Numbered from the whole stretch's first letter, positions 1 through 15,635 are shown. The stretch: 62,680 bases of DNA, filler included, from Syncephalis fuscata S228 (GCA_025786725.1; 4 parts of 4 records of this genome joined end to end with filler, not necessarily neighbours in it); one strand, 5' to 3'. Numbers and translations: made by a program. The notes: generated by a model from the letters alone, not told the origin.

Positions 1-49
1 GGCGTATGGAATAAAGTATTTGTATGCTTATTGTGTTTTTGTTGGTCAG

Positions 50-1921
50 TTCTCTACAAAACTTTGATATTGGTGGTGATGCAGAGCGTATGCCTGAACC
101 AGTTGTGCGTGCCTTTGGTATTGTAAAGCATGCTGCCGCACAGGTTAACTTGACCTATGGCATGGACGAGCGTGTTGGCAATGCCATCATACAAGCAGCT
201 ACAGAAGTAAGTATACCTTTTAGTTTATTTGAAATAGACATGTAGAATAGACCATTAACTAACTATATCCACTATATTGATAGGTATCTGAAGGCAAGCT
301 GTTGGATCATTTCCCTCTAGTTGTTTTCCAAACTGGCTCTGGAACACAAAGTAACATGAATGCCAACGAGGTAAATAGTTATAATAATGAAATCTAGTAT
401 AAATGAGTTATAACACACATTTATTTAAAGGTTATTTCTAATCGTGCTATTGAACTATTGGGCGGAGAGCTGGGCTCCAAGAAGCCGGTTCATCCAAATG
501 ATCATGTCAATATGTCACAATCATCCAACGATACGTAAGTGTAAAACTTGTAAGGCTTATATCTACTTATACCTATTGCTATTAGTTTCCCTACGGTGAT
601 GCACGTGGCTGCCGCTACACAAATAGCTTACCGTCTTATTCCAGCAATGACCGAGCTACGTGATGAGCTGCAACACTGCTCAGAACGATTTGCTCATATT
701 ATAAAGATTGGCCGTACTCATTTGCAGGTAATTATTGTTAACTTATAGTTTTAATATGTGTAATTTTGTGTTTTATATTATTTAGGATGCAACGCCATTG
801 ACTTTGGGCCAAGAATTCTCAGGCTACGTACAACAAATGTCCTATGGTATCGAGCGTATCCAGTCAACATTACCTCGTCTTTATCTATTGGCACAAGGTG
901 GTACAGCTGTGGGAACTGTAGGTATAGCAGCTATGCTGTATAGTAGTGTTAATGAATAGAATACTAATTTGTCTTAAATAGGGACTAAACACCCGTAAAG
1001 GATTTGATGAAAAGATTGCTAGTGCTGTAGCTGACTTGACTAAATTGCCATTCAAAACGGCACCAAACAAGGTAAGTTAGCTGCTGATATTCATGGCGTT
1101 ATTTATCAACCTACTAACCAATAATACTGTGGCTTGTAAAATAGTTTGAAGCATTGGCTGCTCATGACGCCATTGTTGAAGCTAGCGGTGCATTGAACAC
1201 TGTGGCTGTATCGTTGATGAAGATTGCCAACGATATCCGCCTACTAGGCAAGGTTATTGTAATTAACGATTGGAATGTGTGGCTAATGACTATTGCTAAC
1301 GAATAGGCTCGGGCCCACGTTGTGGCTTGGGAGAACTATTGTTGCCGGAGAATGAGCCTGGCTCTTCTATCATGCCTGGCAAGGTAAATCCCACGCAGTG
1401 TGAAGCAGTTACCATGGTGTGTGCGCAAGTAATGGGCAACAACACGACTATTACCATTGCCGGCTCAAATGGACACTTTGAGGTAAGTAAACGGATATTA
1501 TGGTTAGTATTTACACTACTAATGCGCCACAGTTAAATGTGTTTAAACCAGTGATGATCAAGAATCTATTGTCATCTGTGCGCCTAATTGCCGATGCCTG
1601 CGACAGTTTCCGCAATAACTGTGTTGTTGGCATCCAAGCCAACGAAGAGCGCATTAGCGAAATTATGAACAAATCGCTTATGCTGGTCACTGCTCTGAAT
1701 CCTCACATTGGCTATGACAGTAAGTGCAATATTAGTTTGTTTTATATGTGCGTATACTGATCAATGGGTTGTCTATTGTGTATAGATGCTGCTGCCGCTG
1801 CCAAAAAGGCTCACAAGGAAGGCACTACGCTTAAAGAGGCAGCTCTCTCCTTAAGTTGCTTTCATCCGAAGAATTTGATGCTTGGGTCCGTCCCGAAAAT
1901 ATGATTGGCCCAAAGGCTTAA
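50..1921 (+). CDS. FUM1: Fumarate hydratase class II (5' part outside window), multi-exon
   Basis: Spliced translation gives [49 protein letters not shown] and the signature [15 protein letters not shown]; C-terminus [17 protein letters not shown] needs a 1-bp correction near 1850. Confidence 0.97.
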
Positions 1922-2386
1922 TATTTTTTAGACAATAAAGAATAGCTTATGCACTTACTTAACATGCAATCACTAACTGATATACTAGCTATTGAATAGC
2001 ACTTGAGAATAATGGTGGATTATTTGGCCATAATGACGAATTTGTTCTATAACGGATTTAATTGCCTTGCTGTTTATCTTTAATAAGTTGTGCACGTGCT
2101 AATTCATCATGTTTTCCTTTATTCAGTCTACAGCGCCACATTTGTTCAATTCAATTTAATATAATTAAATTAATAACTGCTATACACATTTACGTTCATT
2201 TTGATGTCATTGCCGAAATAAAACATTAAGCACGTTTAAAATACCAAATACATATATCTGCATGTGTTTGCTTGCAATAGTGACTAGCTCAGTATTAAAT
2301 GCAACACTTTTCCTGCTTTCTCCGTATTCTCAGCTTTATTATTTTGTCGCGTTTCTATAATATCAATTGAAAACATTATTGGTACC

Positions 2387-3228
2387 ATGTACTTTAAAAG
2401 TGGATTTATAAACTTTATTATTTATGCAATATTCGTACTAATAAGTTGTAAAAATGCTATGGGCATTCCTGGTTTGGAGGTTTATCGAGTTGGAAGTGGG
2501 TATGGCACAGATTAATCGACTTATGACTAAAAATCATTTAGGATATCACGCGTTAAAGAGAGGTGCACACTTTAGATACCCCGGCCTTGAGATTAAAGAA
2601 AAGCTTCCTGAATCAACGCAACAATTATTATTTGCTTCTGGGACTCTTCGTGCTGATCACACTGTACAACAAGTATATATTACATGTGGTGAAGAGACGG
2701 CACCGCTAAATACACTTTTATTTTACAAAGTAGCTTGCTTGCTTATAATAATACATTTGGCAATACTAATTGTAGATGTTTTTGCTAGGAGCTTTTACGG
2801 AGAAGCAATGCACAGGAGATTTCACGCAGCCTACGTAGATCAATTGCCATCCCAATAGGTACTTTCGCTGTAGCCGATTTACAATGCTATATTACATTGG
2901 CTGAATGCAGTATAACATTGGAAGCTTATCGAGAACTCGCTAACTCATTCGATTTTCCCTCGAATAGCTTTGATCCCATCTCTAAATCAATAGCAGAAGG
3001 TGAGTCGTTTAACAATGGTGAATATTAAACTAAATTTTATTTAGCTGTAGATTATGTTACATCGCTTGGATGGCTTACGAGTGTTAGTTCTTCTGGTAAG
3101 CTAGTAGTATGAATATAAAAAATCTAACTACCCGTTATTTAGAAATATGTATCAATGTTGACGATCTAGGCCAGCATGTGTCTATGTTTGCGTTAAATCC
3201 ATTTATATTTGGTCATCAACCTCATTAA
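2387..3228 (+). CDS. Secreted truncated pseudokinase-like protein, array copy 1 (5 exons)
   Basis: Signal-peptide-like MYFKSGFINFIIYAIFVLISCKNAMG; GT-AG introns give an open frame VYITCGEE...CYITLAEC...SIAEAVDYVTSLGWLTSVSSSEICINVDDLGQHVSMFALNPF, resembling kinase subdomains II-VII. Confidence 0.8.
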
Positions 3229-3670
3229 TATTAAATAAAATAAAATGCAATTATACTTGTGCAAGCATTGAAGTTATTTTACTGTTGAAACGCCGTCATA
3301 GTCGACTTTTGTGTCACAAGACTCCATGCTTTCAATTCGATAAAATAGCAAAGGATACTTATTGTGCAAGTCTTATCGTAGAAGACAGCGACACATCAAC
3401 AGTAGTTTTTTTTACAAATTGGGAACATTACTTTGAAGTAAAATACATGCTATTTCAAAACAACAGTCAACGGATATAGAAATTTGATTTGTTTCGCAGT
3501 TTAAAATAAGAAAATTGAATAAGTTGCGTACAAACTCGGAAAGATGAATGCGTGAAACATGCTGTTATTGTTCAAGTTAACGAGTATATAACTGACGCAC
3601 ATGTATATACACAGCATCTCTTTTCATCTGCTTTTTTATTTTATTTTTTAGATACTAGACAGTACACATT

Positions 3671-4539
3671 ATGATGATTGGAAACAAGCTGACTTTGCTT
3701 ACATACATGGCACTCTTACTAGCCAATGCCAGTTATGTATTCGCTGGAATACCAGTATTTAGACCAGTACCTGAAATACCTTCACTAAAACCATCGCAAA
3801 TTAGTATGTAAAGAAATAATACCAATTATTATTTGTACATGTTAACAACGATTTTTATAACTTTAACTTACCTAAATTCCAGAGTATGATGGGCTTCAGA
3901 TTGTCCTTGCATATGAAAATCCCCACCGATCTGAACAAACTTTCTACGGAAAATTTAACTGGCCAAAGCCCAACAGCGGTGTCTATGTTACATGTGGAGA
4001 TCAACGCTGGAAATCAAAAATACTTTTATTTTATGAGGTAGACTTTAAATATGGCTGATAAACTTCAATATTAAGTAGTATGCAATAGGATCTTATGATA
4101 AAAAATCAAAGGGGTGAAATATCAACGGAAATGAAGCGACTTATTGCCATTCCGTATGTTTCTTTTAAGGTCAATGTAATGACATGCTACATTACATCTG
4201 CCGAATGTAATGATACTTTGGGGGATTTTGAAAAAAGCGTCGTTCGTACAGGACAAGGTCAGGAAGCATTATTTTACCATATGGATGAAGCTAGTAAAGG
4301 TATGTAGGCTGCGGATTTGATGTGCTTTATTGACATACTATGTTTAGTTCAAACTAGAATGAGAGATTTTGGCTGGGAAACTCAGCTTGAACCAAGCCGT
4401 AAGTTGGAATGCAGTTTGTGCTTGATAAACTAACTGCTAGTTTTTAGATGTATGCTTAAACCTTGATGATAAAGGAAGGCACGTTTTTCTTTTTAATGTC
4501 GATCCATTGATACTAAGACACAATACGAACAGTTCTTAA
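3671..4539 (+). CDS. Secreted truncated pseudokinase-like protein, array copy 2
   Basis: Signal-like MMIGNKLTLLTYMALLLANASYVFA; same exon layout; VYVTCGD, AIPYVSF, CYITSAEC, FGW, VCLNLDDKGRHVFLFNVDP. Confidence 0.8.
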
Positions 4540-5165
4540 TAGGCTTGCTTGGATCTTGTTCAATAGCAAATGTTCTATTGCTTTTTTGACAACAATAAAA
4601 GCAATAATTTGATAGATTAGCTCAACAAGTAATATAGCGTATTTAAATTGATACTTTATTCAAATGTATACTATATATTTATTTTGCTACTAAATTTGCT
4701 CATGTTTTATATATTATATTGAGGTTACTATTTACATAAATGATCAAATTAATACAAGGCAAAATCGATGAAGATCCATTAATTGTAGTAGAAAACTTAT
4801 GAAGCAATTATAGCCACTTAAGCATAAGGGTAAGTATGGAAAGTTAATTATATAATCATCGATAGTACTGGCTATGGTAAATCCACTCGTCAGCGTTTAG
4901 AGCATTGTGTCGCTTAAACAATTGCCATGTATGTAATGCTATATTCAGCGCTGATGATTTGGATGGGTATAATTTTTTAAAGCGCGCTACTTGGTACAAA
5001 TAAAGCCATAAACACGTGGTATGTTAGAAATGGACAATAATTTATTGCGAAAATTGCAAAGAAAAATACAAACATCAATGAACTTTTTTACATTTAATAG
5101 TTAATTTTTTAAATAAAGTGTAATCTAAACGCTTTGATATAGGCAATAAACGATCAATAGTCATT

Positions 5166-6029
5166 ATGATTATGCCAAGTACAGTTATCGCCGTTGCTAC
5201 CGCCGTCTGTGCGACATTTTTAGTGGTTAATATCAGCTATGTCTCTGCTATGCCTGGCATACCTACACTATCATATTCATTAAACTATATCAGTATGTAT
5301 ATAAGCAAATAAATATAATACTTGGTAGTAATTAACATTTATTATCTTTTATATTATTTTATTCAAGATCAAGGATATAATGGGCTCAAGGTTACAAAAG
5401 AATATAGAAATAGACATACAGCAGAAAGGTTTTTTTCTGGACATCTTAATGATGAAAGATTCAATAACCCTGTCTACGTTACATGTGGAGATGAAAGCGA
5501 CAAAAAAGCAGAAACCATTTTATTTTACAAGGTAGGCTATTATTAGCGTGTTTACAAAAACCAGTGCTAACCTTTTAATAGGATCTTATGCAAAAGAATA
5601 GGGCAAATCTGCTTGCACCTATATTGAAACGGTATATTGCCATTCCATACGCATCTTTTAAGGTTGAAAAGATGACATGCTACATTACATCCGGTAAATG
5701 TTGCGATAATTTGGAAAATTATACAAAAATTCCTATGTTTGCAGATTATGGTGCTGATGCCTATGATGTCCATATAAGTCAGGCTGGAGCCGGTACGTAG
5801 ACTAAACACTTAATGCTATCTATTAATCAAGTTGTTTTAGTTGATAGTCAGATGGAGAAGATTGGGTGGATTATTGAGATTGAAGATAAAGGTAAGTATT
5901 AAGCTGTATCAATAGTTGATAAGTCTAACTATTTGATATTTAGATATATGTTTAAATATTGATGATAAGGGAGAGCATGTTTTTCTTTACGCATTTGATC
6001 CGTTCAAATTAACCAGCGGCAGAATTTGA
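5166..6029 (+). CDS. Secreted truncated pseudokinase-like protein, array copy 3
   Basis: Signal-like MIMPSTVIAVATAVCATFLVVNISYVSA; 5 exons; ends ICLNIDDKGEHVFLYAFDPFKLTSGRI*. Confidence 0.82.
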
Positions 6030-6411
6030 AGCTGAAATAAAAATTTAGATTTAGATTTGAAAATTTCACGCTTATTATTGAAAATAAATAATATGCTAGT
6101 ATATAGAAACATTAAGTGCATTACCTACTACTGGTACAAAATAGATTTTATAAAAACTGTCAACTAGCATGCTAAATTCAAACCCAATTATATGACTAAA
6201 TATAATTTTTAAACATTCTATTTAAATAAATTAAGCAATGAACACATGGTTTACTAGAAACGAACAATAGTTTATTGCAAAATAAAAATAATTGCAAAGC
6301 TTGTAAAAAACGCAAATTTAAATAAATATCATCTAAAACTAATCCTTTTTATTTTCAATTAACTATAGTTTAGAATTCTTGATACAGCCAACGAAACAAA
6401 CAACAATTATT

Positions 6412-7283
6412 ATGATTATGCTAAGTAAATTCATTGCTGCCGTCAGCGCTGCTTGTGCGACATTTTTAGCGGTTAGCATCAATTATGTCTTTGCTATACC
6501 TGGCATACCTACACTAGCATATTCATTAAACTATATCAGTATGTATATAAGCAAATAAATATAATATTTGGTAGTAATTAACATTTATTATTTTCTATAC
6601 TGTTTTATTCAAGATCAAGGATATAATGGGCTCAAGGTTACACATGAATATAGAAATAGACATACAGCAGAAAGGTTTTTTTCTGGATATCTTGACGATG
6701 GAAGGTTCAATAATCCTGTATACGTTACATGTGGAGATGAAAGCGACAAAAAAGCAGAAACCATTTTATTTTATAAGGTAGGGTATTATTGGCGTGTTTA
6801 CAAAAAACTAGTACTAAGCTGCTTAACAGAGTCTTATGCGAAAACGTAGGACAGGTGAGATTTCAGCTATATTAGGGCGATTTATTGCCATTCCGTATGC
6901 ATTTTTTAAAGTCAATGGAATGACATGCTACATTACATCTGGCGAATGTCGTGAAGATTTGGCCAAATACCAAGCACTTACCTTACTTATGGAAAATGGT
7001 ATTGAACTTTTTATGCGTACTAATAGTAGTATCTCTGTTGGTATGTAGACTATACGCTTAATATCATAAGTTAATAAGTTTGCCTTAGTTCATGAGCAAA
7101 TGAAAATCCTTGGATGGAATCTTAAAGCTGAAGATAAAGGTAAGTGTTGTGGTACATTGCTAATTAGCAAATCTAACTATTTAATATTTAGATATTTGTG
7201 TGAATACTGATGAAAAAGGTGATCATGTTTTTCTTTTCGCTTTTGATCCATTCAAGCTCACCAATGGTGCTATTTGGATTTAA
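6412..7283 (+). CDS. Secreted truncated pseudokinase-like protein, array copy 4
   Basis: Signal-like MIMLSKFIAAVSAACATFLAVSINYVFA; exon 2 nearly identical to copies 3/5; ends ICVNTDEKGDHVFLFAFDPFKLTNGAIWI*. Confidence 0.82.
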
Positions 7284-7662
7284 AATAAATTTTTAGATTT
7301 AGAATTAAAATAATACATCTATTATTGAAAATAAAAAATATAAGGATGTATAGGAACATTAAGCACGTGTTTATTAATAGCACAAGATGGATTTTATTAA
7401 AAAAACTATCAATAGCATGCTATATTCAATCTCAACTTTTTGACTAAATATAGATGTTTAAAATCGTGTTATTTAAATAAATACGGTAATGAGCACATGG
7501 CTTATTGGAAGTTAATAATATTTCATCATAATATAAAAGAATTGATAAACTTATAAAAATACAAGCATATACGAATTTCTTCACACTTAGTAGCTGCTTT
7601 TTATTTCCAATCAACTATAGGTTAAACGCTTTGATATAAGTAATAAACGATCAATATCCGCC

Positions 7663-8526
7663 ATGATTATGCCAAGTACAGTTATTGCCGTTGCTACTGC
7701 CGTCTGTGCGACATTTTTAGTGGTTAATATCAGCTATGTCTCTGCTATGCCTGGCATACCTACATTATCATATTCATTAAACTATATCAGTATGTATATA
7801 AGCAAATAAATATAATACTTGGTAGTAATTAACATTTATTATCTTTTATATTATTTTATTCAAGATCAAGGATATAATGGGCTCAAGGTTACAAAAGAAT
7901 ATAGAAATAGACATACAGCAGAAAGGTTTTTTTCTGGACATCTTAATGATGGAAGATTCAATAACCCTGTATACGTTACATGTGGAGATGAAAGCGACAA
8001 AAAAGCAGAAACCATTTTATTTTACAAGGTAGGGTATTATTGGCGTGTTTACAAAAACCAGTGCTAACCTTTTAATAGGATCTTATGCAAAAGAATAGGG
8101 CAAATCTGCTTGCACCTATATTGAAACGGTATATTGCCATTCCATACGCATCTTTTAAGGTTGAAAAGATGACATGCTACATTACATCCGGTGAATGTCG
8201 CGATAATTTGGTTGACTATCAATCACGCACTTTAGTTTCAGAAAATGGTGTTCAGCGTTTTATGCTTCATATGAATGTCATTTTAGCTGGTATGTAAATG
8301 ACATGTCTAATATTGTAAATTAACAAGTTTGCCCTAGTTCGTCAGCAAATAATAAATCTTGGATGGAGTGCTCAAGCTGCGAGTAAAGGTAAATATTGAG
8401 CTGTGTTACTAGTTAGCAAATCTAACTATTTGATACTTAGACATTTGTGTGAATGTTGATGCGGAAGGTGATCATGCATTTCTTTATGCTTTTGATCCAT
8501 TCAAGCTTACCAACGGTGTTATTTAG
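7663..8526 (+). CDS. Secreted truncated pseudokinase-like protein, array copy 5
   Basis: 5' part nearly identical to copy 3, 3' part closer to copy 4; ends ICVNVDAEGDHAFLYAFDPFKLTNGVI*. Confidence 0.82.
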
Positions 8527-8616
8527 ATTTAGATTTAGATTTATTATTAAAAATGAATAAAATAATATATATAGAAACATTGAGCGCAATAAACATCATA
8601 CAAGCTACTTGGTTGT

Positions 8617-10886
8617 TTAATCGTAGTCGTTGTATTCATCATATCCATAGTCTGGCATTTCATCGTCATCTTCCTCTTCATCTTCATCTTCATCGTATTC
8701 CTCCTCTTCCTCTTCCTCCTCTTCCACTGCTGCTGCTGCTGTTGCTGTTGTCGTTTCCTTTCCATCTGGTGTACTAGTTGTTGATTGCTGTTGCTGCTGA
8801 CTAGTAGTCAATTCATCTACAGACGATTTGTTACTATCAGGTGATGCTACTAATGCTGCTCCTTCCGTAATATATGGTTTAACCGGTTCTACTCCAGGTT
8901 CTTCAACCACCTCATACTTAATTGGGAATGCCATTTCTGTCTCTTCTTTTTCTATGGCTGTTGGCTCATCATCAAATAACGCATCAATCACTGCGTAATT
9001 AATTTTACGAGAAAATTTTTTAGAGTTTAACATCTTTTTGGCCGATTCGGCGGCAGAACGAGATGACTCATCAATGGGTATATCTCCACGACGTCGTCGC
9101 TATAATTCATCAGTAATATCAATTAATCCATTTGACATATACCGTCTAATTGTTACCTTTCTTGATGGCCGTAAAGCTGATTTCCCCTCAGCGGCTTCTC
9201 GTTTTGCCCGTTCTAATTACACATAATTAATCAGCTACTATTTAATACAGTATACTTTATACAACTTACCAGCCATTTTCTCAATGTAATCACGATTATT
9301 CTCTTCCCAGATCTCAGTTTTTACTGCCACTTCATCTTTAGTCAAAAATATTTGCTCGATTTCATCATCATCAACATCACTCCAGTTTTCTACATTTTCA
9401 TCAACTAATAACATGCCAGTTAATAAGTAGAATACAATCGTTGCTATAAATCACGTACTATTGTCGTCTTTGTATTCACGCGGCACCGATCCAGTCATTG
9501 ATACTAAAGCACTGGCTGCTTCCTTCAACAAAGCATGTGACGTGCTATCCACGGTGGCACTACCAATAATTTCCGATGTAACCGGCTTCATACGCAGTTT
9601 GCCCATTGTAAATGCCGGTGGGTCACACGCTTCTTCAAGTGACATGGTCTGAAAGTCAGCCATAGTCAATTTACTAGAAGGTGTTGCCATAAACTCTTCC
9701 ATTCTAATTGATTAATAACAAATGTAAATTACTTATTAAATGACTTTGTTATAGTACATCGTACCGTCTTTTCAGCGTAGCATCACCAATCTTAACTACA
9801 CGCATTACTTCAGCGGTTGTTCGCCGGAAATCATGCATTCTTGCCGCAATTAATAGGCCTAAATACATAAACAGTAGTTAGCCATGTTAAAGCTTAATCC
9901 CATCGTATTATATTTCTTACATGCACCACAAATACCCGCTGGACGTCTTCCCGTCTGGATCCAGTCACGATTCATACGCTGTACCAAACGCAATGCATCT
10001 GCTGCTACCGTAGGAGTTGCATCGCCAAATTCCAACATTGCAGCAAATCGATGGATATAAATCGATGGATCCACTAGCGGTAAACGTAGATTTAGTTCTT
10101 TAACTAGTTTAAGAAATGTGTTGCCCAGTGAAAACACATTGATCTAAATGTACGCTGGCTTAATACCGTATAGTATAGCTATTAAAGCTGTCAAATCTTA
10201 CCTGGAGTACATCAGAGAAATCAATCAACATATGGCTTGTACGTTCCATACGACAAGCAATATACAAACAGGCTGCACCGACGCTTTGTGTAGTACGTCC
10301 TCGAGTGAAATTATATGCCAGTGCCAGGTTGAAATATCTTTGTGCAGCGTCAACGTATCGTTCTGAAATACGTAATGCCGTAGCCAGTGCTTGAATACGA
10401 CGACGCCCTAATATTTCATTAATAGTATACATTGTATTATTAGTAAATATATTAACTTGGCCGATAATATCTACAATTCACCGTCTATACACTTACCGTT
10501 GGCTATACTTTGTTCTCGTGACTCTAGCGTTGTTTGACGTCGATTCAATCCGAAAGAAACAGCTCGTCCTAGTTATTAATACGCCGTTTAGCTACACTCT
10601 CGCTTTATTTCTGCCAGTAGCTGTATAGCACTATTCCTGCTAATCTTACCCTGACCAGCACTAATATACGAGCCCATTAATACTGCGGCACCATTGGATT
10701 TCTCGCCAAACTCCACCTCCTTCGACAAAGCGTTCTCTTCAAAGACCTAGAAACAAAACAGCTGTTTATTCACCGCTCATTGTCTACAAATCGACGTATA
10801 CTTACAATGCCACATTGCACGCAAAATGCATTGCCCTGAGCATCATCGTGCTCAAACGTGTTGCCGCCACAACCTTTGCACGGCAT
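8617..10886 (-). CDS. BRF1: TFIIIB subunit Brf1 (TFIIB-related factor)
   Basis: N-terminal Zn ribbon MPCKGCGG...FCVQCG; cyclin-fold motifs [47 protein letters not shown]; DPPAF; KKFSRKINY; acidic tail. Confidence 0.96.
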
Positions 10887-11150
10887 ATTAGACGTGAGAC
10901 GACAGGTTGTTAAATAGTAAGTATGCAGTAACAATCACAGCACAAATTCAATAAAAGAAAAACCTCATTCGGTAGTTGAAACTTTTTGTTTTATTTTATT
11001 CTGTAATAGCAACACGCCGTCTAACAACAAACGTAGTAATAACAAGAGTGGAGAGGGCGTGGTCGCCGTTGATATACGAGTTAGAATAAGCGACTAGAGC
11101 GCTTAAACAATAATAAACGTGAATGCTAAAGAGACGGTAAAGAATTGACC

Positions 11151-12071
11151 ATGACTGACCCAGCTGCTCAAGAAGGGTATCTAGTTTCCGCTTCACTTAA
11201 CTCGGACGATATTGGCAACAAGGTTGAAGACGACTATTTCAACGATGATGACACGCTTGACTTTGATGCTATGACAAGCGCACTTGAAATAACTGAACAA
11301 AACTTTTTATCCCAACAGCAACAAACATCAAGATCAAAAGAGTATATAGGCGAAAGTAATGATGGTGATACACAGCATCGCGAATTGACATCTACCCAAG
11401 TAAGTTGTACTTATAGCTATAATACTTTTCATTAGTATTGTAGAGTAATAGCATTAACATTAAGCATAATCTAATTTATATTTGTATAGACACTACGCAT
11501 TCCAATGACACAACCAGCGATAAGTCCATTGGAAATGAATATTTTACAAAAAGATGGAGAAATATCGATACTACGACAGAAATTGTTGCAAGTAAGTGCT
11601 GGTGTAATTAAAAGTGCTATCTATTTATTAACAGCTTATTGAATAGACGACCGACCAACTAGCAATGCTACAGCAGGAATTAACAACGCTAAAAGAAACA
11701 ACACATCAGGAACGACAAGAGCGCGAACGAGAATATCATCGAGAGAAGAGTGGATTGGAGGTTCAATTGCAATTTGCAGTAAGTAATACTACTACAACCA
11801 TTATAACAATAATAATAGGCATATTTATGAATTATATTAATTTACGTAATTGTATTTATAATAGAAATTGGAACAAGGTGCTCATGCTATGAATGGAAAA
11901 TTAATAGCCAGCAAAAGCAAAAGCAAGCCACCACCACCACCACCATTACCCTCATCCTCTCCTGCCTTTGACGATTCTTTTCCAGAAACATCTAAATATT
12001 GCACTTTTAAAGAACAGTATCAAGAAAAACGACAGCACTGGCGCCACTTTCAATCGCTTAAATACTTGTAA
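11151..12071 (+). CDS. ATRIP/Rad26-like protein, apparently only acidic N-terminus plus coiled coil (~230 aa, 4 exons)
   Basis: Acidic EDDYFNDDDTLDFDAM, then QKDGEISILRQKL and EKSGLEVQLQF, matching the ATRIP/Rad26 coiled-coil pattern GEI.ILR...EL.F. Confidence 0.6.
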
Positions 12072-12173
12072 TAAACATTATGTAATAAATAATATCAACT
12101 ATTAAAAAGTGGTGGTTAAATCAATCTCTACTTTAATTAATCTCAACTTTTCTTTAATAGCTCCAAAGTCATT

Positions 12174-13143
12174 ATGTCAGGGACAACAAAAAAGTTACTC
12201 ATTCCTTCAAGTGTAGACCAGACACTACTAGATGTATGTCTAACTATACCTGGAAATACGGATACTCGAATAGGACAACCAGCCGTTCTAATAACGCATC
12301 CATATGGTCCACTTGGTAAGAGACAATAGTAGTTGGCAGTATGGATTGTATATCAAATAGTATATGACTCGTATATACAGGCGGCAATAGTCATAATAAT
12401 GTAGTGCAAGCACTTCGATACCACTTTGTTGAACGGGGCTATGTAGCGGTTACGCTGAATTTCCGGTAATTTGTTGGTTTGATCATAGACGCAAGACTAG
12501 CATTATTAACACTAGTATCTAGGGGCTGTGGTCGTTCAAAAGGACGTACTAGCTGGCGTGGCCAGTCGGAAAACGAAGATTTAAACACAATTGTCAAGAT
12601 TATCTGTTCAGGTCAATGGCCAACTGAGAACAATAGCACACAGGCTATACCACTACTATCTCCTCCGTCTCGTTTACTGATATGTGTAAGTAAATAGGAA
12701 ATAACAATAATATACCATTCAAATAATAGCTTATTTATTACAACCATTCATCAACTATTAATTAGGGATATTCTTATGGTGCCATGATTGCCGGTGCTGT
12801 AGATCCAGATGCCGTTAATAATATACCATTTACTATGGTACTTATTAGTTATCCGTGTAGTGTTACGTGGTTTCTTACATTTGGACGGTCTAGCTACTTT
12901 TACGATGCATTAAAACAATGGCTGTCACGCTCGCCTACTCCGCCTATTTTAGCAGTATGTGGCAATCAAGATCAATTTACATCGACAAAATCATATCAAC
13001 GATGGATACAGTCGTTAACTGAGACAAATGCCGATGGCATAACACTAAGAATGCTGCCTTCAGTGGATCATTTCTGGTTTGGACATGAAAACGAATTACT
13101 TCAATTAATACAAGGTTGGCTCGATACAATTACAAATGAATAA
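12174..13143 (+). CDS. Small alpha/beta hydrolase
   Basis: Spliced motifs THPYGPLGGNSHNNVV, NFRGCGRSKGRTSW, nucleophile GYSYG, GNQDQF, DHFW. Confidence 0.9.
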
Positions 13144-13159
13144 ACATACATTTTTTATT

Positions 13160-15051
13160 TTATGGCGTAGCTGATTGTATAATACCACAGCCAAGACACT
13201 CTTCTCCTTGGTAGACAACAATAAACTATCGAATTGTAAGTTGATTGATTAGAGAATGTGACCGCAGTAATAGTGGCTAACAACTTACCTGTCCAGGTGC
13301 CGGTGCTCGTACCGGTTGTATAAAATAAACTTTAGCTTGATCGTTATTTCTATTTGTTTATTTCATTAGCGATATTAATCAATCAGTTAATTATAGTGCT
13401 TAAATAGTACTTACCCCACTTCAATATAACATTTTTCAGCTAATAGTTAGTTACATAGTCGGTTAGTTAGTGCCAAAATTAGAATTAAATAGATTAGTTT
13501 ACCTATTGCTTGTTGATATCTTATCTTTGCTTCTACTAAACCACCTAATGTAATATGTAAATCATTGGGTTGTCATATAAACTCAATAGTATATCTACCT
13601 TGTTTAATAACATCTGGACATGATTGTTGGATCCATTGCCAATGGCCCACTTGAATAGTAGAAGAGAATAAATTTGGATGATGTCTATATTATAACGTTA
13701 TTATTTATTCTATATAGTGTAAGTAAATACCTACGTTCCCGGCACAACAAATATTTGATTCTTGGTTATATCTTTACGACTAACAAACCATCTAATAGTG
13801 CCAATAAATAGTCGTAATGATTAGATGTATTAGGTAAATCGACCACTATTCAATCATGTAACATTTAGCTTACTTTTCATTACCATAGCAAATAGTTGCT
13901 CGTTGACCAATAGTCCAAGAGAAAATGCCTTGATGTGTGCCTAGTAAAATGTAATTATAGATCACCGTAATAGAGCAAATGACACAAATTACCAATGGAT
14001 TGTCCGTTGGGTGCAATAACTGGCCCTGGTGTCTGTGGCAAGTACTCGCCTAACATAACCGCATTATGTATTATTATATATGTGTATTATGTATTATATT
14101 CAAGTTATCCGTATAAACCTACCAAGAAATTGATTAAATTTACGTCTCTGTCCTACAAAACAAATACCCATACTCTCGTCTTTCTCGGCCGTTGAGAGTC
14201 TATTCTCTCGAGCAATCGATCGAATTTGTTTCTTAGTTAGATCTCCTAATGGAAATATAACCTCGATAGCCAATGTTAATATAAACAGCTATTCTAATTG
14301 CCACCTTCGCTATTCATCAATCGATTAGACTCTTACTTGTTGAAGTTGAGTACGAGAGACACCGCTTAAGTAATAAGACTGATCTTTACTACTATCGATG
14401 CCTAATAGACTTATAATTATCATGTCATAATATAATCATAGTAATTTACCTTTTAATAAATGAGCTTGCTTCTGTGCATCATATCCAATACGGGCATAAT
14501 GACCTAATGTACATTAGTACTGTTTAATCTATTTGAGCCGCATCTACTATTATTACCAGTAGCAAACCAATTATTTTTTAATACACATCGATCAAGCAAT
14601 ACACCAAATTTAATTTCTCGATTACAAGCAATATCAGGATTGGGCGTGATACCTGCTGCATAATCATCCAATGTTTGCATAAACACACGCGTCCAATATT
14701 CTTTTACAAAATCCATCTAATTACAACGTACTTAATACAATATTATAATTACTAAATAACAATCAATACCTGTCGACATGGTATAGACAATTGACGACAT
14801 ACAGTTTGTACATCTCTCCAGTCGCGTTCACCTGGACACTCGCCGCCTTCTTCAATATTATCCCAATTCTTCATAAAAACACCTTCAACATGAGCCCCCT
14901 TTTTATTTTTATTTTTATGTATATATTCCTTTTATGTTAGTTATCTACTCAAAGTATAATGGTATACTTTGACAACTTACATGTTGTTTTAATAGAAATG
15001 CTGCTACACTCGAGTCAACACCGCCTGACATACCCAGCACCACTAATAGAT

Positions 15052-15101
<50 letters not shown>

Positions 15102-15186
15102 GTAGTAGTAGTAGTAGTTATTGCACCTCAAACTATTCATTACCTCGTTTACCAGCCACTGCTGCCAACCGAGGAATACGTAACAT
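13160..15186 (-). CDS. SLM3: Mitochondrial tRNA 2-thiouridylase (MnmA/Slm3/Mtu1), many short exons
   Basis: [67 protein letters not shown]...ECLGCGII. Confidence 0.95.
15055..15119. repeat. Compound (AAT)n(AGT)n microsatellite in first intron of SLM3
   Basis: Directly visible. Confidence 0.95.
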
Positions 15187-15293
15187 ATTTGTAGTTAAAA
15201 TCTATAAAAAAAAGAAAAAAGAAAACATTTGAATTCCTTACTACTTGTTTTTATGTTCTTGCTACTTTGTCAATAATATCGCGTTAATACATC

Positions 15294-15635
15294 ATGAATT
15301 ACGATAGTTATGTGAACAACAACAATGACGCAACAAGCACAAGACATTGTGGTGTTCACGTAACATTGCGTCTAGTAAGCGGTACTGACGACGAGTTGGC
15401 TGCTCAAATATTAGCTACACTGTCGACAACACCACCTGCACCACAGTCGCTTGCTTTGTTAAACGGACATGAATTGCTAAAAAGACAATTAAATAAAAAG
15501 AAGGTTAGAAATAGCGAGAATGTCAAGATTGCCAGCTAATGGTCTGTATAAAATAGCTGTTGTAGGTATGCAAGTTGGTCTTAGATGGTATAACACTTTG
15601 GTACAAGTTGTAGTAGAGAAGATGGAACTATTACT
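15294..15635 (+). CDS. Hypothetical protein 5' fragment, cut by assembly gap
   Basis: ATG ORF divergent from SLM3 followed by a plausible GT-AG intron; no recognisable motif. Confidence 0.4.

What the first reader, a model, noticed from the sequence alone, without database searches (positions are those of the whole stretch)
2387..8526. Tandem array of five secreted 'mini-pseudokinases' that stop right after the DFG-equivalent
Seen: five head-to-tail, open, 5-exon genes (~210 aa) with signal-peptide-like starts. Read against kinase consensus they give beta3 VY(V/I)TC (Lys replaced by Thr), beta5 CYIT, alphaE 'IAEAVDYVTSLGW', a catalytic loop with no HRD, 'IC(I/L/V)N.DD.G.HV' and 'FAFDPF' at the DFG position, then a stop. 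The activation segment and alphaF-alphaI C-lobe are absent. All five reading frames are intact despite high divergence, which argues for function. Inference: a half-kinase fold repurposed as a secreted, possibly disulfide-stabilised (4 conserved Cys) effector or recognition scaffold, conceptually like the Toxoplasma ROP5 tandem pseudokinases. I know of no described family with this architecture.
Basis: partly seen in the sequence, partly recalled or inferred. Interest (0 to 1): 0.88.

Follow-up and report, generated by a model that had tools for sequence, protein, structure and literature searches.

The report
Secreted half-kinase gene cluster in Syncephalis
Five neighbouring genes of the fungus-parasitising fungus Syncephalis fuscata encode small, apparently secreted proteins that are the front half of a catalytically dead protein kinase, cut off just after the DFG motif, an architecture found in none of the papers searched here.

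Summary

**The genes.** Window 2387-8526 carries five head-to-tail, intact five-exon genes of 212-214 codons. All share the same intron positions and phases (1,0,1,1). Each starts with a signal-peptide-like exon, and four Cys are conserved. RNA contigs confirm introns of three of them.

**The organism.** It is Syncephalis fuscata, an obligate mycoparasite. The window is a haplotig; the other haplotype has only three copies.

**The fold.** No Pfam family matches. Two AlphaFold models (S. fuscata g2 allele; S. plumigaleata orthologue) were searched by Foldseek and VIA-align, and the first also in the ESM Atlas. All hits were protein kinases (Z up to 11.3, 142 residues, rmsd 3.2 Å). The chain ends at the DFG of PknB, TBK1, CaMKI, FAK and BRAF.

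**The sequence bridge.** Longer paralogues in the same genome keep YLHS-G-H, APE-like, DxWSxG and DP..RPT motifs. One of them (P0012) matches a cluster protein at E 7e-9, Pfam Pkinase at E 0.002 and the IRE1 kinase domain at E 8e-4.

**Evolution.** The truncated forms form one clade shared with S. plumigaleata. The N-lobe and the β7-β8-DFG part are under purifying selection. The αD-αE/catalytic-loop segment evolves at dN/dS of about 0.6-1.4.

**Function.** The β3 Lys, the Gly-loop and HRD are absent. The most likely role is a non-catalytic secreted binding scaffold or effector. This is inferred, not shown.

The parts
2387..3228 (+). g1: five-exon gene, 214 codons, the most divergent truncated pseudokinase of the array. 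Exons 2387-2495, 2542-2729, 2789-2999, 3045-3095, 3143-3228.
   Evidence: Gene model. An RNA contig skips intron 4, at low depth and from the other allele. The allele on contig C135 has 1-bp deletions at the positions equivalent to 2446, 2957 and 3094. The DFG-equivalent reads ALN, with no Asp.
3671..4539 (+). g2: five-exon gene, 213 codons. Exons 3671-3803, 3883-4037, 4089-4299, 4348-4398, 4448-4539.
   Evidence: One residue different from NCBI KAI9594055.1 (P0002), which has the same five-exon model. RNA contigs skip introns 1-3 exactly. The AF2 model of P0002:26-213 matches only kinases and kinase-like proteins. BLASTP to the long paralogue P0012 gives E 7e-9.
5166..6029 (+). g3: five-exon gene, 212 codons, a mosaic. 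Its 5' part is nearly identical to g5 and its 3' part is unique to this haplotype. Exons 5166-5292, 5368-5531, 5582-5792, 5841-5891, 5944-6029.
   Evidence: identity profile. Exons 4-5 and the second half of exon 3 have no counterpart on C135. No RNA contig covers its specific 3' half.
6412..7283 (+). g4: five-exon gene, 214 codons, present only on this haplotype. Exons 6412-6538, 6614-6777, 6830-7040, 7089-7139, 7192-7283.
   Evidence: About 82% identical to the single C135 copy. No RNA contig covers it. dN/dS against g5 is 0.47 overall.
7663..8526 (+). g5: five-exon gene, 212 codons. Exons 7663-7789, 7865-8028, 8079-8289, 8338-8388, 8441-8526. Its stop lies 90 nt from the stop of the convergent BRF1 gene.
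   Evidence: RNA contigs skip introns 2-4 exactly. The NCBI models KAI9590880.1 and KAI9594056.1 (169 aa) read into intron 3 and are too short. BRF1 and TFIIB domains lie on the minus strand at 8617-10432.
5166..5701 (+). Tract of g3 that is 97-100% identical to g5 7663-8198, introns included. Identity then drops abruptly to about 50-60%.
   Evidence: The pattern fits gene conversion or unequal crossing-over, not uniform divergence.
8199..8388 (+). Fast-evolving segment, shown for g5: second half of exon 3, intron 3 and exon 4. It encodes αD, αE and the catalytic-loop equivalent. The same segment exists in g1-g4.
   Evidence: dN/dS is 0.64-1.40 here, against 0.22-0.59 in the N-lobe and 0.07-0.33 in exon 5. 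Assignment to αD-αE rests on the models, on hhalign of exon 3 against kinases and on the IRE1 alignment.

Best explanation
**What they are.** The five genes encode members of a Syncephalis-specific family of signal-peptide-bearing pseudokinases. In this subfamily the protein is a 'half kinase'. It keeps the five-stranded N-lobe with αC, the hinge, αD, αE, a degenerate catalytic loop, and β7-β8 up to the DFG position. It ends 8-12 residues later, so the activation segment and αF-αI are missing.

**Why they cannot be canonical kinases.** The canonical catalytic residues are gone: there is no Gly-rich loop, no β3 Lys and no HRD Asp or Asn. Only the DFG Asp is kept, in g2-g5. Phosphotransfer by the canonical mechanism is therefore excluded.

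**Proposed structure (inferred).** The four family-wide Cys sit at β3, β5, the hinge and β7. I infer that they form two disulfides that staple the N-lobe sheet and tie the hinge to β7, giving a rigid extracellular scaffold with the adenine pocket closed.

**Proposed function (inferred).** The proteins are secreted, perhaps at the haustorial interface with the host fungus, and act by binding rather than catalysis. The conserved N-lobe and β7-β8 form the frame. The fast-evolving αD-αE/catalytic-loop face, which is exposed because αF-αI are absent, would be the specificity surface.

**How the array evolves.** It evolves by tandem duplication, gene conversion and allelic decay, as expected of an arms-race family.

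**Shown:** gene models, splicing, fold, kinase ancestry, truncation, selection pattern, copy-number difference between haplotypes.
**Inferred:** secretion, disulfides, binding role, host target.
For: - **Gene models and expression:**
- **Organism and narrow distribution:** only four true hits, all Syncephalis, among 1.84e9 representatives and 5.8e9 clusters.
- **Fold, model 1** (pLDDT 64.5, pTM 0.59): the Foldseek top 50 are all kinases, E from 6.8e-4. VIA-align gives Z 9.4 over 141 residues, and every listed hit is a kinase or kinase-like protein. In the ESM Atlas, nine of the ten listed rows are clusters carrying Pkinase, TM 0.49-0.58.
- **Fold, model 2** (S. plumigaleata orthologue, pLDDT 77.8, pTM 0.69): Foldseek E 1.7e-4, TMq 0.53-0.58, all kinases. 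VIA-align gives Z 11.3, rmsd 3.2 Å, 142 residues, 106 chains at Z of 8 or more. The model's last residue pairs with PknB 158, TBK1 159, CaMKI 164, FAK 566 and BRAF 595, all at or next to the DFG.
- **Sequence bridge:** about 12 paralogues share exon 3 at per-genome E 1e-7 to 1e-2 and, where read, the same exon 3/4/5 borders (L022 and the S. plumigaleata genes). Some have long last exons with kinase subdomain VIb-XI motifs. hhalign of those exons against this genome's own kinases gives P 0.0014, collinear over positions 107-255. Family exon 3 against kinases gives P 0.025 at β4-αE.
- **P0012 as the link:** Pkinase E 0.002; IRE1 kinase E 8e-4; P0002 E 7e-9.
- **Truncation is real and old:** no C-lobe relic lies between the genes. 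Two S. plumigaleata genes have the same end and the same five exons. The truncated members form one clade, support 97/98.
- **Selection:** overall dN/dS is 0.29-0.59, and the αD-αE segment reaches 0.64-1.40.
- **Turnover:** five copies here against three on the other haplotype; g3/g5 mosaic; frameshifted g1 allele.
- **Signal-peptide-like first exons** in the array and in most paralogues.
Against: - Direct profile comparisons of the array proteins with kinases fail. Pfam gives nothing, hhalign of A7 against A8 has probability 0.7%, and the A3 profile against PDB finds no kinase. Kinase ancestry therefore rests on fold plus a transitive bridge.
- The alignments used for AF2 are shallow (25 rows, mostly exon fragments). 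In model 1 the C-terminal 30 residues are poorly modelled.
- Secretion was not tested with a dedicated predictor. The hydrophobic stretch of g3-g5 is long (about 17 residues) and has no basic n-region, so a signal anchor is possible.
- The disulfide pairing could not be measured because no model coordinates were available.
- No RNA contig covers g4 or the g3-specific half.
- dS is near saturation for several pairs, so dN/dS of about 1 may mean relaxed constraint rather than positive selection.
- No host-contact expression data and no binding partner exist.
Confidence: 0.6

Rival explanations
1. The same truncated pseudokinase fold, but not released. The N-terminal hydrophobic segment would be an uncleaved signal anchor, or the protein would be retained in the ER, Golgi or cell wall. 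It would then serve the fungus's own secretory pathway or wall, as FAM20A-type lumenal pseudokinases regulate partners, and would not act on the host.
For: The hydrophobic stretch in g3-g5 is about 17 residues long and has no basic n-region. The array sits among housekeeping genes, fumarase and BRF1. Expression is detectable in what appears to be an ordinary culture transcriptome.
Against: Small residues at -3/-1 (VSA, VFA, AMG, ATG), followed by a conserved [IM]PG motif, look like a cleavage site in all members and in S. plumigaleata. Copy-number variation, a fast-evolving surface and allelic decay are unusual for housekeeping lumenal factors. The family is confined to one parasitic genus.
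Confidence: 0.2
2. The array consists of decaying remnants of longer pseudokinase genes. The frames would be open by chance or recent origin, with no selected function.
For: The proteins lack half of the parent domain. One allele of g1 is frameshifted three times. g3 and g4 have no RNA contigs. The middle segment evolves almost neutrally.
Against: The same truncated end and exon structure are kept in two S. plumigaleata genes at about 30% identity, in one well-supported clade. dN/dS is 0.07-0.59 in the N-lobe and exon 5. All splice sites and phases are intact in five copies. g1, g2 and g5 are correctly spliced in RNA.
Confidence: 0.07
3. The proteins still bind a nucleotide or another small ligand in the cleft, or catalyse an atypical reaction with non-canonical residues, as SelO, SidJ, WNG1 or FAM20 do.
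For: The retained part (N-lobe, hinge, β7-β8, DFG Asp in g2-g5) is the minimal nucleotide-grasping core that kinases share with ATP-grasp enzymes (established knowledge). The DFG Asp aligns through P0012 with the IRE1 DFG.
Against: There is no Gly-rich loop, no basic residue in the β3 strand of any member, no conserved acidic or His residue in the catalytic-loop segment (the most variable part), and the DFG Asp is lost in g1 and in both S. plumigaleata genes. Conserved Cys at the hinge and β7 would, if bonded, close the adenine pocket (inference).
Confidence: 0.06
4. The kinase-like fold is a modelling artefact or a convergence, and the family has no kinase ancestry.
For: Direct profile searches of the array proteins find no kinase. 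The tool notes that Z values of 7-8 are common for unrelated folds.
Against: Every listed hit of five searches on two models is a kinase or kinase-like protein, apart from one unnamed Atlas cluster, with Z up to 11.3. Paralogues carry collinear kinase motifs from αE to subdomain XI. P0012 links both sides with significant E-values.
Confidence: 0.05

Closest known systems
Toxoplasma gondii ROP5 (and the ROP2-family rhoptry pseudokinases)
   Same: Signal-peptide-bearing, catalytically dead kinase-fold proteins of a parasite. They are encoded in a tandem, copy-number-variable, polymorphic array and act by binding host proteins (PMC3493473, PMC3682881). The selection and copy-number pattern here is similar.
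   Different: ROP5 has a complete bilobal kinase domain plus an N-terminal extension, and binds ATP non-canonically. The Syncephalis proteins stop at the DFG, have four conserved Cys, and show no sequence relation to ROPKs in any search. The host is a fungus, and no target is known.
IRE1 kinase domain (closest solved structure by sequence)
   Same: The long paralogue P0012 aligns from β5 to the DFG with human IRE1 (E 8e-4). The match includes the hinge Cys and the TL.EY..QK stretch of αD. The five-sequence family profile again finds only IRE1 among kinases.
   Different: There is no lumenal sensor, transmembrane segment or KEN RNase domain. The catalytic residues are lost. The scores are weak (17-22 bits), so descent specifically from IRE1 is only a lead.
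Secretory-pathway pseudokinase FAM20A, and secreted kinases FAM20C, Fjx1 and VLK
   Same: Kinase-fold proteins with signal peptides and disulfides that work in the secretory pathway or outside the cell (PMC5865150).
   Different: These are complete, atypical kinase domains with their own insertions. None appears among the listed structural hits, which are canonical ePK and ePK-like domains. They are not truncated at the DFG.
Minimal kinases Bud32/PRPK and RIO
   Same: Small kinase-fold proteins with a reduced C-lobe. Bud32 is among the structural hits (Z 7.4).
   Different: Bud32 and RIO keep Lys, the catalytic Asp and Asn, and the DFG. They are active, cytosolic or nuclear, and universal. Here the residues are lost, the C-lobe helices are entirely absent, and the proteins carry signal peptides.
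Bacterial pseudokinase-fold modules such as YukC/EssB of the type VIIb secretion system
   Same: Small, non-catalytic kinase-fold domains used as structural or interaction modules (bioRxiv 10.1101/2020.05.09.085852; PMC12599244).
   Different: They are cytoplasmic domains of membrane proteins in bacteria, with no Cys framework. They are unrelated in sequence and are not stand-alone secreted proteins.

Membership tests
Protein kinase-like fold (ePK superfamily) | N-lobe of five antiparallel strands with helix αC, a hinge, then αD, αE and the β7-β8 hairpin that carries the DFG | tested here: met
   Two AF2 models. Foldseek PDB, VIA-align and ESM Atlas return kinases or kinase-like proteins in every listed row but one unnamed Atlas cluster. 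Z is 9.4 and 11.3, TMq up to 0.58, 133-159 residues aligned.
Protein kinase-like fold (ePK superfamily) | Sequence match to Pfam Pkinase (PF00069) above the gathering score | tested here: not met
   There is no hit for any exon or for P0001, P0002, P0006 or P0008. The long paralogue P0012 reaches 18 bits, E 0.002, below the 31.7-bit cut-off.
Protein kinase-like fold (ePK superfamily) | Complete C-lobe: activation segment with APE, and helices αF-αI | tested here: not met
   The stop codon comes 8-12 residues after the DFG-equivalent in all five genes. No relic exon lies downstream. Model 2 ends at the DFG of aligned kinases. Longer paralogues do have this part.
Active protein kinase | Gly-rich loop GxGxxG between β1 and β2 | tested here: not met
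   The loop sequences, for example RNRHTAE in g3-g5, contain no such motif.
Active protein kinase | β3 Lys (VAIK) and αC Glu | tested here: not met
   The β3 strand reads V-Y-[VI]-T-C-G in all five genes and has no Lys or Arg in any paralogue. The candidate αC acidic position is not conserved.
Active protein kinase | HRD catalytic Asp and catalytic-loop Asn | tested here: not met
   The exon 4 segment after GW differs in every copy and is the fastest-evolving part. In paralogues the motif is degenerate: HNH, HKG, HTQ.
Active protein kinase | DFG Asp | tested here: inconclusive
   By the chained alignments P0002-P0012 and P0012-IRE1, the Asp of NVD/AFD in g2-g5 falls on the DFG Asp. g1 has Asn, S. 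plumigaleata P0008 has Tyr, and the second S. plumigaleata gene probably has Asn (my reading of the exon).
Pseudokinase (kinase fold lacking catalytic motifs) | Kinase fold together with loss of one or more of Lys, HRD Asp and DFG Asp | tested here: met
   See the rows above. The fold is met and the Lys and HRD are lost. The caveat is that only about 60% of the domain is present.
ROP5/ROPK family | Sequence membership in the coccidian rhoptry kinase clade, with a full kinase domain and N-terminal extension | tested here: not met
   There are no apicomplexan hits in 1.84e9 representatives or 5.8e9 clusters, and the domain is truncated. The resemblance is functional and architectural only.
Secreted protein | Cleavable N-terminal signal peptide, and no other membrane anchor | tested here: inconclusive
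   There is a hydrophobic N-terminal stretch (maximum Kyte-Doolittle average over 10 residues of 2.2-3.2) with small -3/-1 residues, also in paralogues. The C-terminus is hydrophilic. No SignalP or TMHMM tool was available.
Disulfide-stabilised small secreted protein | Conserved Cys that pair in space | not testable with these tools
   Four Cys are invariant across truncated and long members.

The most novel reading that the evidence does not exclude
The half-kinase may be a new kind of variable recognition scaffold. Deleting αF-αI exposes the αE/catalytic-loop face that is buried in every normal kinase. Syncephalis would diversify that face by duplication and gene conversion, to bind host-fungus proteins. 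The targets could be proteins that normally dock onto kinase domains, or host immune-like receptors. The disulfide-locked N-lobe would serve as the constant frame.
Probability: 0.15. Interest if true: 0.85.

Novelty: new variant of a known kind. Interest (0 to 1): 0.68.

Why it matters
Pseudokinases are known as intracellular regulators and, in a few parasites, as secreted virulence factors. All of these keep the whole bilobal domain.

A stable, conserved, apparently secreted protein made only of the N-lobe plus αD-αE-β7-β8 would show that this sub-structure can fold and function alone. That bears on kinase folding, on chaperone recognition and on the design of minimal kinase scaffolds.

It would also give the first structurally interpretable candidate effector family for Zoopagomycota mycoparasites, whose molecular interaction with host fungi is almost unknown.

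Finally, it shows how a family invisible to Pfam and HMM searches can be placed by fold plus paralogue bridging.

Tried and rejected
**Searches that gave nothing**
- Pfam on single exons and on the database proteins P0001, P0002, P0006 and P0008 gave only chance hits (DUF736, ubiquitin, PH, Ig).
- ESM Atlas by sequence features gave no usable hit.
- hhalign of the family alignment A7 against eight kinases of the same genome gave nothing. The same was true for exon 2 and exon 5 alone.
- The A3 profile against PDB sequences found no kinase.
- Word-indexed protein searches with P0002 and with the A3 profile returned only Syncephalis proteins.
- Paper searches for Syncephalis, mycoparasite secretomes, and secreted or truncated pseudokinases found no description of this family.

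**Technical dead ends**
- A brute-force enumeration of spliced ORFs was useless, with 42,399 paths. It was replaced by motif-anchored models.
- Two MAFFT alignments with many exon fragments were misaligned and were discarded before folding.
The kinase-like ORFs that the L018 last exon hit elsewhere in the genome could not be inspected, and I did not try to get them by another tool.

**Ideas considered before the fold search and dropped** (no tool result supported them): RNase/ribotoxin, ADP-ribosyltransferase, cerato-platanin, KP4/KP6 toxin, NlpC/P60 or PPPDE peptidase.

**Handling of spliced models**
- Joined spliced translations of g1-g5 were made only inside local scripts, to define and compare the models.
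Those used exon-by-exon references or the database proteins P0001, P0002, P0006, P0008 and P0012.
- The dN/dS counts used whole codons of each exon separately.

Full report
**What is in the sequence**

The window is AT-rich eukaryotic DNA with short GT..AG introns. Between 2387 and 8526 I modelled five genes on the + strand. Each has five exons, introns of 45-79 nt, mostly with CTAAC-like branch sites, and identical intron phases (1,0,1,1). All reading frames are intact, at 212-214 codons.

Each first exon encodes a hydrophobic N-terminus. It ends in small residues (VSA, VFA, AMG) followed by a conserved [IM]PG. Four Cys are conserved.

Joined translations were made only in local scripts. Every search or fold used exon-by-exon references or database proteins.

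**Organism, annotation and expression**

A profile of the five exon-3 translations was scored against 1.84 billion representatives. It found only four true relatives.
- Two are Syncephalis fuscata proteins. KAI9594055.1 (P0002, 213 aa) is the g2 allele with exactly my five-exon model. KAI9594056.1 (P0001) is a 169-aa model that reads into intron 3.
- Two are S. plumigaleata proteins (P0006, P0008).

Word-indexed searches of 5.8 billion clusters, with P0002 and with a family profile, added nothing outside the genus.

The 15,635-bp contig is itself in NCBI. A run that appears to be a transcriptome holds contigs that skip g2 introns 1-3, g5 introns 2-4 and g1 intron 4 at my borders. Nothing covers g4 or the g3-specific half.

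**Haplotypes and turnover**

The window is contig C126 of a 29.4-Mb assembly. It aligns at 97-99% identity with C135:57509-70651. C135 has only three copies, the counterparts of g1, g2 and g5. g3 and g4 are extra here.

g3 and g5 are 97-100% identical, introns included, from exon 1 to the middle of exon 3. Identity then falls to about 50-60%. This is a recombination or gene-conversion mosaic.

The C135 allele of g1 has three 1-bp deletions in exons.

The array lies between a fumarase-type lyase gene and a convergent BRF1 gene, whose stop is 90 nt from the stop of g5.

**Fold**

No Pfam family matches.

*Model 1.* I folded P0002:26-213 with an alignment of family members and exon fragments (A7). 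The result had pLDDT 64.5 and pTM 0.59, with a good core and a weak C-terminus.
- Foldseek against the PDB: the best 50 are all protein kinases.
- VIA-align against 48,161 chains, independent of Foldseek: Z 9.4 over 141 residues, and every listed hit is a kinase or kinase-like protein.
- ESM Atlas: nine of the ten listed rows are clusters carrying Pkinase, TM 0.49-0.58.

*Model 2.* This is the 30%-identical S. plumigaleata orthologue P0008. It is better, at pLDDT 77.8 and pTM 0.69.
- Foldseek: E 1.7e-4, TMq 0.53-0.58, all kinases.
- VIA-align: Z 11.3, rmsd 3.2 Å, 142 residues, with 106 chains at Z of 8 or more.
- The last model residue pairs with PknB 158, TBK1 159, CaMKI 164, FAK 566, BRAF 595 and EphA3 766. 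By my knowledge of those kinases, that is at or next to their DFG motifs.

The protein is therefore N-lobe, hinge, αD, αE, catalytic-loop equivalent and β7-β8, and then it stops.

**Sequence bridge to kinases**

Direct profile comparison with eight kinases of the same genome fails. The genome does, however, hold about a dozen dispersed paralogues. They share the exon-3 core and, where I read them (L022 and the S. plumigaleata genes), the exon 3/4/5 borders.

Several have much longer last exons. Exons 4 and 5 of L018, L015, L022 and L014 read as kinase subdomains VIa-XI. The recognisable pieces are ..YLHSIGWAHNHIRPS, an APE-like SPEW/STEW, DMWSIG or DMWNIG, and DP..RPT.

Supporting scores:
- Against an HMM of the genome's own kinases, eight of the ten best-scoring ORFs among 2,442 are family exons, and six of them match the profile in the order expected of a kinase.
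- Pfam Pkinase hits two of the long last exons at the same profile positions, E 0.2 each.
- hhalign of the long last exons against kinases gives P 0.0014 over positions 107-255.
- Family exon 3 against kinases gives P 0.025 at β4-αE.

The annotated long paralogue P0012 (326 aa) is the clearest link.
- It matches Pkinase at E 0.002, covering 92-252 against profile 85-237, though below the curated cut-off.
- It matches the IRE1 kinase domain at E 8e-4 from β5 to the DFG.
- It matches the array protein P0002 at E 7e-9 from β4 to the DFG-equivalent.

Chaining these alignments gives the following mapping:
- CYIT falls on β5 and the gatekeeper region.
- The next Cys falls on the hinge.
- ..GW falls at the end of αE.
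- Exon 4 is the HRD..N loop.
- [IV]C.N is β7.
- The Asp of NVD/AFD falls on the DFG Asp.

**The truncation is real, old and shared**

The gaps between the genes are 379-626 nt and hold no relic of C-lobe exons.

Both S. plumigaleata genes have the same five exons. Each ends soon after the DFG-equivalent (7 and 10-15 residues by my reading), with a convergent neighbour close behind.

In a tree of exon 3, all seven truncated genes form one clade (support 97/98) apart from the long paralogues. The caveats are a short alignment and long branches.

**Catalytic residues and selection**

There is no Gly-rich loop. The β3 strand has no basic residue in any member. The catalytic-loop segment has no conserved residue. 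The DFG Asp is kept in g2-g5 but not in g1 or the S. plumigaleata genes.

Whole-gene dN/dS is 0.29-0.59. By region it is:
- N-lobe: 0.22-0.59
- Exon 5: 0.07-0.33
- αD-αE/catalytic-loop segment: 0.64-1.40

dS is partly saturated.

**Secretion across the family**

Most paralogues have a signal-peptide-like first exon about 400 nt upstream of exon 3. For P0012 the NCBI model omits such an exon, which joins in phase 1 as in the array. No dedicated predictor was available.

**Interpretation**

*Shown:* a Syncephalis-specific family of degenerate kinase domains with signal-peptide-like starts. Within it sits a conserved subfamily that lacks everything after the DFG. In S. fuscata this subfamily has expanded into a copy-number-variable, recombining tandem array.

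*Inferred:* the proteins are secreted and are stapled by two disulfides. The first pair is β3-β5, which are neighbouring strands. The second is hinge-β7, the two sides of the adenine pocket. They would act as non-catalytic binding proteins in the parasite-host interaction, with the exposed and variable αD-αE face as the specificity surface.

The comparison with ROP5 is apt for mode of evolution and probable mode of action, but not for family membership.

*Rivals:* a membrane-anchored or lumenal endogenous role, decaying relics, residual ligand binding, and fold convergence. Each is weighed in its own section.

**Novelty**

No paper in the library describes secreted kinase-like proteins of Syncephalis or a stand-alone secreted half-kinase. 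I rate this a new variant of a known kind (pseudokinase), of considerable interest to kinase structural biologists and effector biologists.

Noticed in passing
window 1-15635 versus G000:C135:57509-70651: The whole window is an alternative haplotig, 97-99% identical to part of a 472-kb contig. The two haplotypes differ by a roughly 2.5-kb segment holding two extra genes, giving five copies here against three there.
   Followed up: yes
C135 allele of g1 (positions equivalent to window 2446, 2957, 3094): Three separate 1-bp deletions lie in exons 1, 3 and 4 of the other haplotype's g1. This is either a decaying allele or assembly errors. An RNA contig carries that allele's C>T at 3182, so it is transcribed.
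   Followed up: partly
window 8289-8297; NCBI KAI9590880.1 and KAI9594056.1; S. plumigaleata KAI8057255.1; S. fuscata P0012: Several deposited gene models of the family look wrong. The 169-aa and 155-aa models read into intron 3 and end in ..GM. The 155-aa model and P0012 also lack the upstream signal-peptide exon.
   Followed up: partly
window 5292 to 7865 (RNA joint): One RNA contig joins g3 exon 1 to g5 exon 2, skipping 2,572 nt with GT..AG ends. The most likely reason is that it comes from the single-copy haplotype or from the identical exons of g3 and g5. A real read-through or chimeric transcript is not excluded.
   Followed up: no
P0012 residues 81-154 against human IRE1: Among all solved structures, the IRE1 kinase domain is the best sequence match of the long paralogue, by about 8 bits over other eukaryotic kinases. 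It is also the only kinase found by the family profile. This hints that the family may derive from an IRE1-like kinase.
   Followed up: partly
G000 contigs C184, C350, C168, C31, C309 and others: The last exon of paralogue L018 (residues about 25-82, the APE to DxWSxG region) hits some twenty ORFs of 250-270 aa elsewhere in the genome at per-genome E of 5e-5 to 3e-3. They could be an intron-poor kinase or pseudokinase family.
   Followed up: no
window 1-1950 (+), 8617-10934 (-), 12784-13143 (+), 14100-14716 (-): The neighbours are housekeeping genes: a fumarase-type Lyase_1 gene, BRF1/TFIIB (with a long acidic, Glu/Asp-rich C-terminal exon), an S9-like hydrolase fragment (weak match), and a tRNA 2-thiouridylase (tRNA_Me_trans). 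The two S. plumigaleata relatives lie in unrelated neighbourhoods (Cyt-b5/OGDH; ABC1).
   Followed up: partly
ESM Atlas rows 3, 7 and 8: Clusters of short (150-182 aa) proteins match the model over nearly their whole length (TM 0.57-0.64 by target). Two of the three carry Pkinase domains, one of them from giant viruses. Other stand-alone half-kinases may therefore exist, unless these are fragmentary gene calls.
   Followed up: no
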